Positions 48,342-53,745 of a stretch of DNA of 64,000 nucleotides are shown in pieces (position 1 is the stretch's first letter; every line of letters starts with the position of its first letter). The translations under genes and the position numbers were made by a program. Source of the stretch: Schizochytrium sp. TIO01 (lineage: Eukaryota; Protista; Bigyra: Labyrinthulomycetes); NCBI GenBank assembly GCA_004764695.1, contig SMSO01000034.1, forward strand, positions 2,294,001 to 2,358,000. The letters run 5' to 3'. The notes under the pieces were generated by a model, which saw only the letters and a list, made by a program, of their open reading frames with translations, did no database searches and was not told the DNA's origin.

Positions 48342-49716
48342 CCTCCACCAAACTGCTCAAAGTGCGCGCGCGATAGCTCTACCTTTCGAGCATTGAGCAT
48401 GCCGACTCAGACTGCTCTGCTTAGCATACACAATGCATCTGTCCCGGCGCAGAAAGAAAGAATGAAAGAAGATGCAGTCGGTACACACCCAAGTGCTTCA
48501 TGCGCATCTACTGCCACTGTAACCGATGCAAGTGTGTGCCCAGAGTTGGCGCTGGGTCACGCCCAGTATAGCAGCGTGCACCTTACCGGTAGCAGAGCAG
48601 TGTCCATTAGGCTGACCAATCAGAGCGCGCTTCGGTGTAGAAGGTGACAGCTTTAGAACTGAACACCCACAGCGGGCACGGGAACCGCATCTTGAAGGTG
48701 CCAAAGGTCTCAGGACATGGTCCTACCGCGCGAGCGTAGAGAAGAACTGCATGAGAAATCTCTTGGGGCTGCAGAAAGTACGTTTGCTCAAGGCCTACTT
48801 AGTGGAGGACGCCGCCGCCAAAGCTAAGGAACTGAACATCCTGAACGGGGATTTGGAAATTCACGACTGTGATTGCAACGGAAGAGAATGGGGTTTTACA
48901 ACTTCAGGTCTGAACGCTGTGTTCTGAAGATTCGGTCTTGAAAATAACTCAGGTTCGATTGGCTCTTCCTCTGATTGTGCAACTCTCCACATGAACGGTT
49001 CTAGTGTAACGGGAATTTACAACGTTTTCCAAACGGTCATGTGCTTCGACCAGTACGGTGCTGTTCTGAAAAGGATAGAAGCTACAGAGTGAACTTTTGA
49101 ATGCAGGTAATAAATATGCCATGTAAGATTGATGCACTGCTCTCGATCGATAAGTCATGGTGCGTTCTGATGAGGATTAACAGAAAAAGTAATTATATTA
49201 TTCAAATTGTGCAGTCTTGTAATTTCTGATTTGATTTTTTATACTAATTTTGCAGACTTCAAGCCACAGATGTCCCAGAAAGGTGCTGTGGCTATTACTA
49301 CTACTACTACGAAGATTTCTAGAGGAGATATGAATGATGCGCAATAGATACAGGGTATGGTGAACTGGATCAGCTAAAGAGCATATTGAAGCGCAAGGTC
49401 GCGCGACGGGTCACTTGAGACAATGTTCTTATCAAAAGTGTCCGTATAACATGTATGCTTTCGTGCGCAGCAGCAGAGGCAGGTTTTATACATACATACA
49501 TTCATTCGTTCATTCATTCGTTCGTGCGTCTGAATAACACTTCAGCTTGCTTGCTTGCTCACATTTTAACATGCGAGTGCTTGTTTTTTGTTTTCCTTCT
49601 ATAGATAAAGTGCATAAGATGTTTGTTTCCTTGTTGGCTGTTTACTGGCATGCACTTGTATTATTGATTTTTCTTGCTTGCATGCTAACTTCTGTGAAAT
49701 ATCTGGTTTATTTGAT

Positions 49717-52041
49717 TTACGTACAGGGAGGCTGCGAAATAAGCATCCTCGAAAAGATTTTACGAAGGTTTGTGAGTCCAAAGACCATCCCCTCATCGTA
49801 GTCGTCGCCGTGTTTGTGACGTTCGACTTTTGCAAAATCGATGAGACGGACGTTGACGCAAAAATTGCGGTCGTCACGGTTGAAGCCCTTACGACGCTTC
49901 TCGTTGGCCTCAGCATCCGGTGAAGACGGGCTAACTGGAATGAGATCAAACGAACGTGAGCGAGGGTGAATGTAAATATTTTCCGATGTAGAGGTTCCTG
50001 ACGAGAGTACCGGAGAGTTGCTTGGTGTTGTCAGAGAGTCCGATGAAGATGAGGAAAGTCTATCACGACGAGCCTGGGGGTCGCTGCTATCATACACGAT
50101 AAGAACTGAGCAGCCATAGAAACGCCAAGGCGTGGTTTTCACAGCTTGCTCGAGCATGGACAGCTGTACGATGATATCATTGACTACATTGACCCGTACG
50201 TTGCCGGAGCGTTTGTCTACCACAAAGGCAAGTAAAGCGTCGTCGAGGCCATCTTGATCAAGGGAGCGACCCCAGTACTTATCCTTGAGAACAAAAGCGC
50301 GCTTGATATCGTCGTATGTCTGCATACCCCCGATGCGAACACCAACTGATTTGGATGTGGTTGATTCTACACGCTTTTGCTTCTTTGCCTTCTTCTCGGC
50401 ACTCTCCTTAGAGTTGTGTTGTTGAATGCCCATTTTCAGATCCAGAATGTGCGGATGGATCAATCCGTGCGTAAGATCCTCCAGTACCAGGTACACGAGT
50501 TTGCCTGGCTCCACCTCGACCACCTTCTTCTTACGGTAGCCCGCAAAACGAGACCAAAGTGAGGTAATACTCCAAGAGCGCTGAAGGCGCGCCGGAGGGG
50601 GAAGCGACTCACCAGGCTGTTGGTGATGTTGTTGTTGTTGTTGTTGCTGCTGCTGAGCGAGAACATGTTTGTGTTGAAGTGGCTGCTCCTCCAGTTGTGA
50701 CTTTGATGTAAGGTTAGAAGTGTTGGGCAGGTTGTCCTGGTCCTCGAGTTCGGCCATCTCGGTGTGATTGCTATCCTCTTCACTGGCAAGGTTAGACGCA
50801 GCAAGAGGGTCGTCGCCGAGCATGCTTTGAGACATTTGGTGGGGTTCTGGTTGAGGCTGTTGTTGCGCCTGATGCCTCAGTTGCTGGTGACCGTAAAAGT
50901 CCGAATCAACAGCGTCTTTGTTGCCATTCTCAGACAGGTGAAGGTCAAGGCTACGCTCGCTCACAGACAGTTCTTCCGCATCCTCGTCGTCCTCGATGTC
51001 GTCGTCCTCATGGTCCTCATCGCTGTGGATCCGATGGGTAGATAGGTTTGTGGGGTTTGAATCAATGCGTTTCCGTTTGACTTCTCCGCTATCGGCAGAA
51101 GTGGCATCGTCGCTTGTTGATCGCTTAGACTCGTCTACCGTTGTGAGTTCACTGTTTCCGTGCATGCACTGAAGGGGTCTTGTGAGTGCGTGGTCGTTTT
51201 CAAGGATGTTTTGCACATCAATAATGACACGGCCAGAGAACTTTGGTGTGAATCGCGCCACTTGGGGCGCCTCTTTCTGTAAACATTCATAGGTATCAAT
51301 TTCCGCCTGAGTGGCAGGCTTGCACAGTTCCCCAAGATCTCCACGAAGCATGGGGAAACTGCCTGCTACCTGGTGTGGGAATAGATACAATTGGCCTCCG
51401 GAGGGGCTCATGGCCACAACCTCGGGCAGGTGGCTTACGCCGCCCCAGACCTCCTCTTCAAATGTGCCATCGCGATACAAAAGAACAGAAAGTGAGCCGT
51501 ATGGTTTCTTCAAGCCGGTGAGTTGCGAGGGTGGAAGTGAATGTGCGTTGCGAAAGAGGTCATCGATGATGCCTCCGTGGGTGACGACGACGACCTGTTG
51601 GCCTTTGTGGAGGTGTACAACGTCGTTCATGAATTGTTTGACACGGCGAAACCTATCATTGAGCGATTCGCCCTCTGGGACCCTGAAGTCCGGGTTACGC
51701 TCCACAAATCGTTTTCTATACACTTCGGGCATGCGTTCCTTGACTTGGTTCATAGACAAGCCAACAAGCGCACCAGAGTTGTACGGGAGAAGTCGTTTGT
51801 CAAGTTCCACTTTAAGGTTCAATTCCTTGCAGATGTTTTGCGCTGTTTCGTACGATCTTGGGCTACTGTAGACTGCCGATACTTTGCGTCCTTTCAATGT
51901 GTTCGCAATCGCCACCGCCTGCAGCGAGCCCTTTCCCGAGAGGTGTGCCAGCGCCGGTGTCACATGTTCAGCATGTCTCACAATATACAACCGCGTCCAC
52001 CCTGGTCGAAGCCCCTCTGTCGGTGTCGTCATCATCCGCAT
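49717..52041 (-). CDS. Fusion: N-terminal histidine-phosphatase (PGM-like, branch 1) domain plus inositol hexakisphosphate kinase (IP6K/Kcs1-like IPK) domain
   Basis: First ATG at 52041. Phosphatase: LYIVRHAE, VYSSPR, PEGES, VVVTHGGII. Kinase: FPHQVAG, LCKP, FTPKFSG, YLVLEDLT..PHILDLKMG, STTSKSVGVRIGGMQTY, KYWGRSL, FYGCSVLIVYD, VRLIDFAK, DEGMVFGLTNL. Single open frame. Confidence 0.88.
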   Translation of the reverse strand: MRMMTTPTEGLRPGWTRLYIVRHAEHVTPALAHLSGKGSLQAVAIANTLKGRKVSAVYSSPRSYETAQNICKELNLKVELDKRLLPYNSGALVGLSMNQVKERMPEVYRKRFVERNPDFRVPEGESLNDRFRRVKQFMNDVVHLHKGQQVVVVTHGGIIDDLFRNAHSLPPSQLTGLKKPYGSLSVLLYRDGTFEEEVWGGVSHLPEVVAMSPSGGQLYLFPHQVAGSFPMLRGDLGELCKPATQAEIDTYECLQKEAPQVARFTPKFSGRVIIDVQNILENDHALTRPLQCMHGNSELTTVDESKRSTSDDATSADSGEVKRKRIDSNPTNLSTHRIHSDEDHEDDDIEDDEDAEELSVSERSLDLHLSENGNKDAVDSDFYGHQQLRHQAQQQPQPEPHQMSQSMLGDDPLAASNLASEEDSNHTEMAELEDQDNLPNTSNLTSKSQLEEQPLQHKHVLAQQQQQQQQQHHQQPGESLPPPARLQRSWSITSLWSRFAGYRKKKVVEVEPGKLVYLVLEDLTHGLIHPHILDLKMGIQQHNSKESAEKKAKKQKRVESTTSKSVGVRIGGMQTYDDIKRAFVLKDKYWGRSLDQDGLDDALLAFVVDKRSGNVRVNVVNDIIVQLSMLEQAVKTTPWRFYGCSVLIVYDSSDPQARRDRLSSSSSDSLTTPSNSPVLSSGTSTSENIYIHPRSRSFDLIPVSPSSPDAEANEKRRKGFNRDDRNFCVNVRLIDFAKVERHKHGDDYDEGMVFGLTNLRKIFSRMLISQPPCT
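50621..50656 (-). repeat. Coding polyglutamine tract (CAG/CAA) in the IP6K insert
   Basis: Translates as QQQQQQQQQHHQQ in the disordered insert between the kinase lobes. Confidence 0.85.
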
Positions 52042-52570
52042 TGGACGCTGCTGCCTCTGCCTCCACCACTGCACGCTCCCCGCGTCCAGCTGCTCCAGTT
52101 TCACGGACCCCTTGGTCTCCTCCTCGGCAATCGTTCTTCTTCTCGACCAAGAAACAGAGAGAAAAAGAGACTCTCTAATAACAAACAATATTATTATTCT
52201 CCTCTTCTTCTTCGCGCCGTCGGTTTTCGTTCACAAAACCCGTCACTTCGAATCCAGCCTCGCGGCCAGGGTCGCCGCCGCTCGTGCCGCGGAAGAAGAA
52301 GCTGTCTCCGCGCGACCTCCTCCTCCTCCTCCTCCACGCGCCGCCGCTCCTCGCGGTGCCGCTGCTCGCCTTGGACGGGGCTCTGACGCCGGGCCTGAGC
52401 AATAATTAATTAGCGATTTGGTCTCCCGGCTTCTCGCTCTTCTGCTTTTCTATTCTATTCTGTGTACGTATGAATATGTTTCTTTCTCTCTCTCTCTGTG
52501 TATATATATATGTGTATATATATATATTCCTCTTATGGCGTCGATGTAATGATGATGAGCTCTTTCTTTC

Positions 52571-52606
<36 letters not shown>

Positions 52607-53745
52607 ATTTGTTATGCATACAAAGCAAACACAAAACTTTCAATTACAAACAAACAACAAAACTTTGGGCGAAAGAATGGGAACTACAAACTAAAAACAA
52701 ACAGCCGCAAAAGAACAGAACAGAAAAACAGAGAGAGACTGGAGGGAAGGGAGGAATCAATGTGGCGAGCGAGTCGTCGCTCGCTCTCTCTTCCCGGTCT
52801 CAACGCCTGCAGGGCTATAGCTAGCTAGCTAGCTAGCTGCCGCTGCTGCAAAGGCCACCCTCCCCCGCGAAGGCTCACGCGGGCCGCACTCCTCCCTCGA
52901 CCGCACTCGATCTCTTGAGAGAAAGAAACGCGCCACAGCTCTTTGTTGAAGGCCCTCACTGGCTGCAGCGATCTCGAGAGCTATAGCTATAGCGAGCTAG
53001 CACCTCTGATGACAAAACCAAACGAAGACCGCCAAAAGAACCACGCACGCCACCGCACAGATGGATGACAAAGCCTCGAGCCTCTGCGCAGCCTCCTGTA
53101 GCTTCTCTCCACTTGGCTTTTGCTCTTGGTGGACCTCTTCGTCTCTGATTGATGTCTTTCCTCGACTTGCTTTTGCAATATTCGCTCCAGCGCACGCGTG
53201 CGCCGCGTCTAGTTAACAATTCTCTTTTGTTATTATTATTATTATAAAAAATAATAATAATAATAATGACGAAAAGGCTTTACTTTACTACTTTAAATTT
53301 AACTCAAATTAAAAAGTAAAGTAAAGTAAAAGAAGAGAATTGAGAAGAAAAGAAAGTGCGGAAACAAAATGGAATTAATCGATCGATGGAACAATCGACT
53401 AATGGATTACTATGGGAGAAAGAAAGAAGAACGAACTCTCAGAGCAATTGACAGAGAAGAAAAGAAAGAAAAGAGAAAAGTAAAAGGAAGTGAAAAGAAA
53501 AAGGGAGAAAGAACTTGAAACAACAGAACGAAAGTCAAAAGAAAGAGGAATGAAAAACAAGAGAAGAAGTAGAAGAAGGGACTCTACTACAGCCGGCTGC
53601 AACTCGACTCTTCGTTTCTCCTCGCGTCGCCCGATCCTTTCCCGCCGTCTTCCCTGCTGCCTTTGCTGCTGCTTGCTTCCACGCTCCGAGTTGCCGCTTT
53701 GGTTTTCAAGGACCAAGCTGACGACGATGCCGGAAAATCGGATTC

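What the first reader, a model, noticed from the sequence alone, without database searches (positions are those of the whole stretch)
49717..52041. IP6K fused to a PGM-type histidine phosphatase: a possible new bifunctional inositol-pyrophosphate switch
Seen: a branch-1 histidine-phosphatase domain (~51430-52000) is joined by ~10 aa to a complete IP6K-like kinase whose signatures (HQVAG, LCKP, PxxLDLKMGxxQH..SAEK, GVRIGGMQ.Y, KYWGR.L, IDFA) match IP6K/Kcs1 better than IPMK by eye. Established: the known kinase-phosphatase fusion in this pathway, PPIP5K/Vip1/Asp1, pairs an ATP-grasp kinase with a branch-2 acid phosphatase; fungal and animal IP6Ks carry no phosphatase domain; PFK-2/FBPase-2 shows that branch-1 domains can serve in bifunctional switches. 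Inference: a convergently built enzyme that makes 5-InsP7 and either removes it or senses a phosphometabolite, linking energy or Pi status to SPX signalling.
Basis: partly seen in the sequence, partly recalled or inferred. Interest (0 to 1): 0.85.

Follow-up and report, generated by a model that had tools for sequence, protein, structure and literature searches.

The report
Histidine phosphatase fused to IP6K kinase
A marine protist (thraustochytrid) carries one intron-less, transcribed gene that joins a histidine phosphatase to the kinase that makes the nutrient messenger 5-InsP7; this pairing is conserved in its relatives, was not found in the searchable literature, and may be a self-contained on/off enzyme for that messenger.

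Summary
Window 49717-52041 (minus strand) is one uninterrupted 774-aa ORF. It has an N-terminal His_Phos_1 domain (Pfam E 4e-32) and a C-terminal IPK kinase (E 4e-46).

- **One transcript:** a transcriptome ORF marked complete is 772/774 identical and starts at the same Met. Single assembled contigs span 49213-52468 with no joints.
- **Conserved fusion:** 16 full-length relatives share the architecture; the only one with an organism name is from Hondaea fermentalgiana.
- **Kinase type:** it is IP6K/Kcs1-type, not IPMK. The motif after DxKxG occurs in 16/16 fusions, 17/17 opisthokont IP6Ks and 0/27 IPMKs. The genome's only other IPK gene is an IPMK + IP3K-like tandem, and no ITPK1 was found.
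- **Pathway context:** PPIP5K, IPK1 and SPX genes are present.
- **Phosphatase:** the nucleophile His23, Arg22 and His155 are invariant. The canonical Glu proton donor is absent in all 16 (Pro or Asn), and the loop holding the phosphate-pocket Asn is deleted.

The phosphatase's substrate is therefore unknown. PP-InsP hydrolysis is my leading inference, not a shown fact. I class it as a new variant of a known kind.

The parts
49717..52041 (-). Complete coding sequence: 774 aa plus stop, no intron. Histidine phosphatase + IP6K-type kinase.
   Evidence: ORF; Pfam domains; 772/774 identity to a complete MMETSP transcript ORF with the same start.
49213..52468 (-). Transcript extent as seen in assembled contigs of runs that are probably RNA. 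The 5' UTR is about 52042-52468 and the 3' UTR about 49213-49716.
   Evidence: single contigs X5 record 6 (49213-52468) and X9 record 19 (49210-52468) with no internal joint. Depth is 593 here against 8.8 and 102 for the neighbouring contigs. Whether these runs are RNA is the tool's guess.
51445..51993 (-). His_Phos_1 (branch-1 histidine phosphatase) domain, aa 17-199.
   Evidence: Pfam E 3.8e-32. AlphaFold model pLDDT 90.9. Foldseek best hits iPSP1 4ij5 (TM 0.82) and PhoE 1h2e.
51967..51978 (-). RHAE motif, aa 22-25: phosphate-binding Arg22 and nucleophile His23.
   Evidence: Invariant in 16/16 fusion proteins. Aligns to the RHAE of iPSP1.
51784..51786 (-). Pro86, at the position of the canonical Glu proton donor (E82/E83 of HFP, iPSP1 and PhoE).
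   Evidence: Alignments. The column reads P x6, N x8, S, R in the 16 fusions and is never Glu or Asp.
51571..51582 (-). THGG motif, aa 154-157, with the second catalytic His155.
   Evidence: Invariant in 16/16.
51373..51444 (-). Conserved junction, aa 200-223, between the phosphatase and the kinase N-lobe.
   Evidence: Eleven invariant residues within aa 204-223. The 200-245 stretch is the most conserved part of the protein (26/46 invariant). Modelled as strands 208-211 and 217-220 with pLDDT 63-80.
51160..51372 (-). Kinase N-lobe, aa 224-294, with the QVAGSFP and LCKP motifs (ATP-binding Lys241).
   Evidence: K241 is invariant. pLDDT 87-96. The same motifs begin the kinase-only relatives P0125 and P0126.
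50581..51159 (-). Disordered acidic, Ser-rich and poly-Q insert, aa 295-487, between the kinase lobes.
   Evidence: pLDDT below 50. No conservation. The CAG repeat at 50614-50660 breaks contigs and differs by one Gln in P0017.
49720..50580 (-). Kinase C-lobe / Pfam IPK region, aa 488-774, with a second disordered insert at aa 661-725.
   Evidence: Pfam IPK E 4.3e-46. Foldseek hits to Ipk2, IPMK and EhIP6KA.
50428..50454 (-). PxxxDxKxG motif, aa 530-538.
   Evidence: P530, D534, K536 and G538 are invariant.
50326..50364 (-). IP6K-type signature (S/T)TS..G.R..G, aa 560-572.
   Evidence: Present in 16/16 fusions, 12/12 named animal IP6Ks and 5/5 fungal Kcs1-like proteins, against 0/27 in the IPMK clade.
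49831..49842 (-). IDFA motif, aa 734-737, with the metal-binding Asp735.
   Evidence: I734 and D735 are invariant.

Best explanation
Shown: this is one expressed, intron-less gene of a thraustochytrid (Labyrinthulomycetes, close to Hondaea). It encodes a two-domain enzyme. The C-terminal half is an IP6K/Kcs1-type inositol hexakisphosphate kinase with every catalytic motif intact. It is the genome's only IP6K-type gene. Inferred: it makes 5-InsP7 from InsP6 and ATP and so feeds the genome's PPIP5K and SPX system. Shown: the N-terminal half is a branch-1 histidine phosphatase under strong constraint. It keeps the phospho-accepting His23, Arg22 and His155, but lacks the usual Glu general acid and the active-site loop carrying the phosphate-pocket Asn. 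It joins the kinase N-lobe through an unusually conserved, structured junction. Inferred, and my preferred mechanism: the phosphatase removes a labile beta-phosphate from an inositol pyrophosphate, the kinase's own product 5-InsP7 or 1,5-InsP8. A phosphoanhydride has a good leaving group and needs little acid catalysis. The protein would then be a kinase/phosphatase pair that sets PP-InsP levels, analogous to PPIP5K but built from different domain families.
For: - **Architecture and single transcript:**
- **Conservation of the fusion:** 16 full-length proteins, about 10 clusters at 50% identity.
- **IP6K type:** every named non-fusion hit of the kinase is an IP6K. The motif test gives 16/16 fusions and 17/17 opisthokont IP6Ks against 0/27 IPMKs. 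The fusion clade (support 99) is separate from the IPMK clade (support 99).
- **Only candidate InsP6 kinase:** the genome's only other IPK gene is IPMK (E 3e-41 to human IPMK) plus an IP3K-like domain. No ITPK1 was found.
- **Pathway context:** PPIP5K, SPX and IPK1 are present.
- **Phosphatase is functional, not decaying:** R22, H23 and H155 are invariant, 38/183 core residues are invariant, and 7 of 8 strain differences in the CDS are synonymous. The fold is modelled with confidence.
- **A missing proton donor is compatible with PP-InsP hydrolysis in branch 2:** Vip1 E991A at the proton-donor position is more active, and MINPP has Ala there (PMC11836120).
- **Independent analogue:** P0106 joins a DIPP-like NUDIX domain (best PDB hits DIPP1, 2, 3 and Ddp1) N-terminally to an IPK kinase. 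Among 55 long IP6K-like representatives no other partner hydrolase occurs.
Against: - No assay or docking here shows what the phosphatase acts on.
- To my knowledge no branch-1 histidine phosphatase is known to act on inositol phosphates.
- The Glu acid is missing, the pocket Asn is missing, and the second Arg is K or L in 3 of 16 members. The domain may therefore be slow or non-hydrolytic.
- The genome already has at least 5 Siw14/PFA-DSP-type genes and a PPIP5K, so no gap in PP-InsP breakdown needs filling.
- Kinase-only relatives lie inside the fusion clade (P0125, P0126), so the kinase works without the phosphatase.
- The tree backbone does not place the clade as sister to opisthokont IP6Ks. 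Structure and PDB profile scores do not separate IP6K from IPMK.
Confidence: 0.42

Rival explanations
1. The phosphatase is catalytically active but on another substrate. One candidate is a phosphoprotein: for example, it could dephosphorylate the kinase's own acidic Ser-rich insert, or act on phospho-His. Another is a small phospho-metabolite. Either way it would regulate the kinase rather than reverse it.
For: Its closest relatives are broad or unrelated small-molecule phosphatases: iPSP1 phosphoserine phosphatase, PhoE, CobC and glucosyl-3-phosphoglycerate phosphatase. Loss of the first specificity insertion leaves a more open, SixA-like minimal entrance (PMC12051542). The protein carries a long Ser- and acid-rich disordered insert. 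Dedicated PP-InsP phosphatases already exist in the genome.
Against: Monoester hydrolysis normally needs the Glu acid, which is missing in 16/16. SixA, PGAM5 and Sts do not appear among the top Foldseek hits. The NUDIX-IPK analogue points to the kinase's own product class.
Confidence: 0.28
2. The phosphatase domain is a poor hydrolase or none at all. It would act as a phosphate, InsP or metabolite sensor, or hold a long-lived phospho-His, and control the kinase allosterically through the rigid junction.
For: The general acid/base Glu and the pocket Asn are absent in the whole family, and the second Arg is not invariant. The junction is the most conserved segment and is modelled as strands next to the kinase N-lobe.
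Against: The nucleophile His23, Arg22 and His155 are invariant in 16/16. Pseudo-enzymes usually lose the nucleophile. The unlinked-domain docking test gave no verdict, so it says nothing either way.
Confidence: 0.18
3. The kinase is not a true InsP6 5-kinase. It would be a multikinase acting on lower inositol phosphates, so the protein does not make 5-InsP7.
For: The tree backbone is unresolved. PDB profile scores to EhIP6KA and human IPMK are equal at about 1e-30. Foldseek ranks Ipk2 and IPMK just above EhIP6KA. IPK enzymes are known to be promiscuous (my own knowledge).
Against: The IP6K-type motif set is present in 16/16 fusions and in none of the 27 IPMK-clade proteins. Every named sequence hit is an IP6K. 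A clear IPMK already exists in the genome. No ITPK1 is available to make 5-InsP7 for the PPIP5K that is present.
Confidence: 0.1
4. The fusion is an assembly or gene-model artefact that joins two neighbouring genes.
For: None beyond the general possibility. The RNA status of the Logan runs is only a guess by the tool.
Against: The frame is open across the junction with no stop. Complete MMETSP transcriptome ORFs from three different 90% clusters encode both domains. Sixteen homologues share the architecture and a conserved junction.
Confidence: 0.02

Closest known systems
IP6K1-3 / Kcs1 (inositol hexakisphosphate kinases, IPK family PF03770)
   Same: The kinase half shares the fold and all catalytic motifs: the LCKP Lys, PxxxDxKxG, SS.L and IDFA. 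It also has the IP6K-specific stretch 'RQH/QQH ... (S/T)TS..LG.R..GM ... DKYWGR', and a disordered insert between the lobes.
   Different: Known animal, fungal, amoebal and trypanosome IP6Ks carry no phosphatase domain. Among 55 long IP6K-like representatives only IPK is found, plus one NUDIX case. The clade is distinct, and its position relative to opisthokont IP6Ks is unresolved.
PPIP5K / Vip1 / Asp1
   Same: It is a single polypeptide with an inositol-pyrophosphate kinase and a histidine-phosphatase-superfamily domain. In Vip1 the proton-donor position is dispensable and even inhibitory (PMC11836120).
   Different: PPIP5K has an N-terminal ATP-grasp kinase (PF18086) and a C-terminal branch-2 acid phosphatase (PF00328). 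Here the order is reversed and both domains come from other families: branch-1 PF00300 and IPK PF03770. The genome has its own separate PPIP5K.
PFK-2/FBPase-2 (PFKFB)
   Same: It is a bifunctional kinase plus branch-1 histidine phosphatase that makes and destroys one signalling metabolite. The FBPase-2 domain matches the model (TM to target 0.75-0.76).
   Different: The PFKFB kinase is unrelated (P-loop type) and N-terminal. FBPase-2 keeps the catalytic Glu, which is replaced here. PFKFB structures match only the phosphatase half (TM to target about 0.35).
iPSP1/PspA phosphoserine phosphatase and PhoE (bacterial branch-1 phosphatases)
   Same: These are the best sequence and structure matches of the phosphatase half (E 1e-37 by profile, TM 0.82). 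They share an RHAE motif, the second Arg and the second His.
   Different: They are stand-alone enzymes that keep Glu82/83 and the loop with the phosphate-pocket Asn. The fusion family has Pro or Asn at the Glu position and an 8-residue deletion in that loop. All NCBIfam scores are far below the cut-offs.
DIPP-like NUDIX + IPK fusion (P0106, unnamed metagenome/JGI protein)
   Same: It has the same layout: a phosphohydrolase at the N-terminus and an IP6K-like kinase at the C-terminus. Its hydrolase belongs to a family known to degrade PP-InsPs.
   Different: The hydrolase family is different (NUDIX), the kinase clade is different, and there is a single representative of unknown organism.

Membership tests
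IPK superfamily (PF03770) | Pfam IPK match above the gathering score | tested here: met
   157.7 bits against a cut-off of 22.2, E 4.3e-46.
IPK superfamily (PF03770) | Catalytic motifs: N-lobe Lys, PxxxDxKxG, SSLL-type strand, IDF(A/G) Asp | tested here: met
   K241, P530, D534, K536, G538, S645, L647, I734 and D735 are invariant in 16/16.
IP6K / Kcs1 subfamily | IP6K-type sequence after DxKxG ((S/T)TS..G.R..G, DKY.GR) rather than the IPMK type (KYPPQ..GFR) | tested here: met
   16/16 fusions, 12/12 named animal IP6Ks and 5/5 fungal proteins have it; 0/27 IPMK-clade proteins do.
IP6K / Kcs1 subfamily | Groups with characterised IP6Ks in a tree, away from IPMK and IP3K | tested here: inconclusive
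   It is excluded from the IPMK clade (both clades at support 99). The backbone joining it to the opisthokont IP6K clade is unresolved.
IP6K / Kcs1 subfamily | Phosphorylates InsP6 at position 5 to give 5-InsP7 | not testable with these tools
   Needs an enzyme assay or yeast kcs1 complementation.
His_Phos_1 (branch-1 histidine phosphatase, PF00300) | Pfam match and alpha/beta/alpha fold | tested here: met
   112 bits against a cut-off of 21.7. pLDDT 90.9 and TM 0.82 to 4ij5.
His_Phos_1 (branch-1 histidine phosphatase, PF00300) | Catalytic quartet Arg-His (RHG motif), second Arg, second His (R8, H9, R58, H149 in HFP; PMC12051542) | tested here: met
   R22, H23 and H155 are invariant. R62 is present in the window protein and in 13/16 members; the others have K, L, L.
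His_Phos_1 (branch-1 histidine phosphatase, PF00300) | Glu proton donor (E82/E83 of HFP, iPSP1, PhoE; E327 of FBPase-2) | tested here: not met
   Pro86 in the window protein. The column is P x6, N x8, S, R. PMC12051542 notes that proton donors vary between families.
His_Phos_1 (branch-1 histidine phosphatase, PF00300) | Phosphate-pocket Asn in the loop after the RHG motif | tested here: not met
   The Asn aligns to the conserved Pro29, and the following 8 residues are deleted.
PPIP5K / Vip1 | ATP-grasp kinase (PF18086) plus branch-2 histidine acid phosphatase (PF00328) | tested here: not met
   Only PF00300 and PF03770 are found. The genuine PPIP5K lies elsewhere, at G000 C24.
PFK-2/FBPase-2 | N-terminal 6-phosphofructo-2-kinase domain followed by the FBPase-2 domain | tested here: not met
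   PFKFB structures match the phosphatase half only. The kinase half matches IPK structures.

The most novel reading that the evidence does not exclude
The N-terminal domain would be a fourth, so far unrecognised family of inositol-pyrophosphate phosphatases: a branch-1 histidine phosphatase with no general acid. It would take the beta-phosphate of 5-InsP7 or InsP8 onto His23. Fused rigidly to the cell's only IP6K, it would form a self-contained synthesis/breakdown switch, or a phospho-His relay, that sets the PP-InsP signal read by SPX proteins. Together with the NUDIX-IPK fusion, this would show that hydrolase-IP6K fusions arose more than once.
Probability: 0.3. Interest if true: 0.8.

Novelty: new variant of a known kind. 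Interest (0 to 1): 0.6.

Why it matters
Inositol pyrophosphates report phosphate and energy status in all eukaryotes. Three phosphatase families are currently recognised as degrading them: NUDIX, Cys-type PFA-DSP/Siw14, and the branch-2 domain of PPIP5K (2026 review PMC13573052). Only PPIP5K is known to be bifunctional.

If this phosphatase acts on PP-InsPs, it would add a fourth phosphatase family and a second bifunctional design. It would also show how 5-InsP7 itself, and not only InsP8, can be set by one polypeptide.

The absence of the general acid makes the domain a useful test case for how histidine phosphatases handle phosphoanhydrides.

The host group, thraustochytrids such as Aurantiochytrium, is grown industrially for DHA and can be transformed. 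The idea is therefore directly testable, and phosphate signalling bears on lipid production.

Tried and rejected
- **TTG-extended ORF (823 aa, to 52188):** rejected. Strain indels fall inside the extension, and the transcript ORF starts at the ATG at 52041.
- **Joints 49518>52817 and 49523>52819:** rejected as artefacts. Both ends are tetranucleotide repeats, CATT/CGTT and TAGC.
- **Complex prediction (unlinked phosphatase aa 1-203 against kinase aa 204-774):** score 0.01, no verdict. It is not evidence either way.
- **The protein-atlas search:** no usable hit.
- **The look-up of encoding contigs:** The organisms of most homologues could not be determined, and only Hondaea is named.
- **Foldseek and PDB profile searches:** they cannot tell IP6K from IPMK.
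- **Tree:** the backbone is unresolved. I did not run AU tests.
- **Non-orthologous displacement of Siw14/PFA-DSP:** rejected. The genome has at least 5 such genes.
- **Stand-alone paralogue of the phosphatase:** none closer than E 2e-4.
- **DIPP-like NUDIX in the genome, searched with P0106:** only the kinase half matched. This is a weak test.
- **Pfam scan of all 138 kinase relatives:** I repeated it on the 55 proteins of 560-1435 aa that fitted the size limit; the four longest, 1499-1581 aa, were left out.
- **Literature:** seven full-text searches and four papers read found no description of this fusion. Subscription-only papers are not covered.
- **Earlier findings of the scan:** nothing relevant.
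Full report
**1. What is there**

On the minus strand, one ORF runs from 52188 to 49717 without a stop. Pfam finds two domains in it: His_Phos_1 (E 3.8e-32) near the N-terminus and IPK (E 4.3e-46) near the C-terminus.

The true start is the ATG at 52041, which gives 774 aa. Two results support this:
- An MMETSP transcriptome ORF marked 'type:complete' (P0017) starts at that Met and is 772/774 identical.
- Related strains carry a 2-nt insertion at 52170 and a 1-nt deletion at 52211. These would break the TTG extension. Inside the CDS the strains show only substitutions, 7 of 8 synonymous.

The assembled contigs come from public runs that are probably RNA. That status is the tool's guess, but neighbouring contigs differ 6- to 70-fold in depth. 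Two of these runs cover 49213-52468 in a single contig without any joint. The gene is therefore intron-less and both domains lie on one transcript.

**2. Organism and family**

The genome is 64 Mb in 37 contigs. The best named homologue, at 80% identity, is 'Inositol hexakisphosphate kinase 1, partial' of Hondaea fermentalgiana, a thraustochytrid.

Word-indexed and exhaustive searches give 16 full-length proteins with both Pfam domains. These form about ten clusters at 50% identity. After them the scores drop to IPK-only proteins. Three different 90% clusters contain complete MMETSP transcripts.

The distribution outside Labyrinthulomycetes is therefore unknown.

**3. The kinase is IP6K/Kcs1-type**

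- **Named hits:** used alone, the kinase half finds only IP6K among named proteins: insect Ip6k, fish IP6K1 and fungal Kcs1-like proteins.
- **Other IPK gene in the genome:** there is exactly one other IPK locus. It is a 773-aa ORF whose first domain is a clear IPMK (E 3e-41 to human IPMK) and whose second domain is IP3K-like (E 1e-9).
- **Tree:** in a 133-row tree the fusion proteins form a clade with support 99. It is separate from the IPMK clade, also at support 99. The backbone to the opisthokont IP6K clade is unresolved.
- **Motif test:** this is decisive. The stretch after DxKxG reads '(R/Q)QH ... (S/T)TS..LG.R..GM ... DKYWGR' in 16/16 fusions, 12/12 named animal IP6Ks and 5/5 fungal proteins. 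All 27 IPMK-clade proteins lack it, and nearly all read 'KYPPQ..GFR' there instead.
- **Catalytic residues:** K241, D534, K536, S645 and D735 are invariant.
- **Pathway context:** no ITPK1 was found, though that search lacked a positive control. PPIP5K, IPK1 and at least seven SPX loci are present. The same 2/1/0/1 kinase complement is tabulated for Hondaea in PMC8024741, which does not mention a fusion.

This protein is therefore the only candidate InsP6 5-kinase of the organism. Foldseek and PDB profile scores cannot separate IP6K from IPMK.

**4. The phosphatase**

The domain folds with confidence (pLDDT 90.9). Its closest structures are iPSP1 phosphoserine phosphatase (TM 0.82), PhoE, glucosyl-3-phosphoglycerate phosphatase, HFP and CobC. 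FBPase-2 and dPGM follow further down. NCBIfam gives the same neighbours, all far below their cut-offs. No close paralogue exists in the genome.

PMC12051542 defines the family's core as R8, H9, R58 and H149, plus a Glu proton donor and a phosphate-pocket Asn. Against that definition:

| Core residue | In this family |
|---|---|
| R8, H9 | R22 and H23, invariant 16/16 |
| H149 | H155, invariant 16/16 |
| R58 | R62 in 13/16; K, L, L in the rest |
| Glu proton donor | Pro86 here; the column is P x6, N x8, S, R; never acidic |
| Phosphate-pocket Asn | aligns to the conserved Pro29, and the next 8 residues are deleted |

The domain is as conserved as the kinase: 38/183 invariant positions against 21/145. 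It is not decaying. It keeps what is needed to bind phosphate and form phospho-His, but lacks the usual acid/base.

**5. The junction**

Residues 200-245 are the most conserved stretch of the whole protein, with 26/46 invariant. Part of this stretch (QVAGSFP...LCKPAT) is the kinase N-lobe, and it also begins the kinase-only relatives P0125 and P0126. The 20 residues before it (aa 204-223) have 11 invariant positions and exist only in the fusions.

In the full-length model (pTM 0.68, with about 230 disordered residues) these residues form two strands with pLDDT 63-80. This suggests a fixed rather than tethered arrangement. A docking test on the unlinked halves gave no verdict.

**6. How it most likely works**

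Shown: an intact IP6K-type kinase and a constrained histidine phosphatase that retains its nucleophile sit on one polypeptide, in a genome with PPIP5K and SPX.

Inferred: the kinase makes 5-InsP7. The phosphatase most plausibly removes a beta-phosphate from a PP-InsP. Three arguments support this:
- A phosphoanhydride has a good leaving group and should tolerate loss of the general acid.
- In branch 2, the PPIP5K phosphatase is activated by removing the residue at the proton-donor position, and MINPP has Ala there (PMC11836120).
- An independent protein, P0106, fuses a NUDIX domain to an IPK kinase in the same N-to-C order. The best PDB matches of that NUDIX domain are DIPP1, 2, 3 and Ddp1. 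Partner domains are otherwise absent from 55 long IP6K-like representatives.

Several points count against it:
- To my knowledge no branch-1 enzyme is known to act on inositol phosphates.
- The genome already has PFA-DSP-type genes.
- Kinase-only relatives exist.

Rivals are another substrate, such as a phosphoprotein or metabolite; a sensor or long-lived phospho-His role; and a multikinase rather than IP6K activity. An artefactual fusion is effectively excluded.

**7. Comparison with known systems, and novelty**

The protein would work like PPIP5K/Vip1 or PFK-2/FBPase-2, but it is a member of neither. The domain families and their order differ. It is a member of the IPK family of IP6K type, and of His_Phos_1 with two accessory catalytic features not met.

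The 2026 review of PP-InsP phosphatases lists only three families, and its text contains neither 'branch 1' nor 'phosphoglycerate mutase'. The 2021 survey of inositol phosphate kinases contains neither 'fused' nor 'fusion'. Seven full-text searches found no description of this architecture. Databases name the protein simply as IP6K.

I rate it a new variant of a known kind. The architecture is solid. The function of the phosphatase half is open and testable in a transformable, industrially used protist.

**8. Housekeeping**

Noticed in passing
G000:C3:2172979-2175300 (+), = L001 619-2940; not in the window: This is the genome's only other IPK gene. It is a single 773-aa ORF with two IPK domains in tandem. 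The first is a clear IPMK (E 3e-41 to human IPMK) and the second is IP3K-like (E 1e-9 to IP3K-A). I know of no description of an IPMK + IP3K-like tandem.
   Followed up: partly
Protein P0106 (635 aa, JGI source, organism unknown): An N-terminal NUDIX domain is fused to a C-terminal IP6K-like IPK kinase. The best PDB matches of the NUDIX domain are DIPP1, 2, 3 and Ddp1, which are inositol-pyrophosphate phosphohydrolases. It is an independent hydrolase-kinase fusion with the same domain order.
   Followed up: partly
Proteins P0125 (377 aa) and P0126 (456 aa): These are kinase-only relatives that fall inside the fusion clade. They start 'MEF..QVAGSFP' directly at the kinase N-lobe and have no phosphatase. 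This is either secondary loss or a split gene; the organisms are unknown.
   Followed up: partly
window 50614-50660: A CAG (poly-Gln) repeat lies inside the disordered insert. It breaks the assembled contigs of two runs, and it is one Gln shorter in the MMETSP transcript. It is therefore length-polymorphic between strains.
   Followed up: no
window 49495-49524 and 52814-52841: Tetranucleotide repeats (CATT/CGTT and TAGC) flank the gene. They attract short matches from many unrelated contigs and create false 'joints' that skip about 3.3 kb.
   Followed up: yes
G000:C13, C30, C24, C33 (for example C13:3737253-3737729): At least five PFA-DSP/Siw14-type (Y_phosphatase2) genes are present, together with one PPIP5K (C24:2009938-2010204, open frame 1210 aa), one IPK1 (C13:1501546-1502718) and at least seven SPX loci. 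This is a full PP-InsP signalling toolkit, without a detectable ITPK1.
   Followed up: partly
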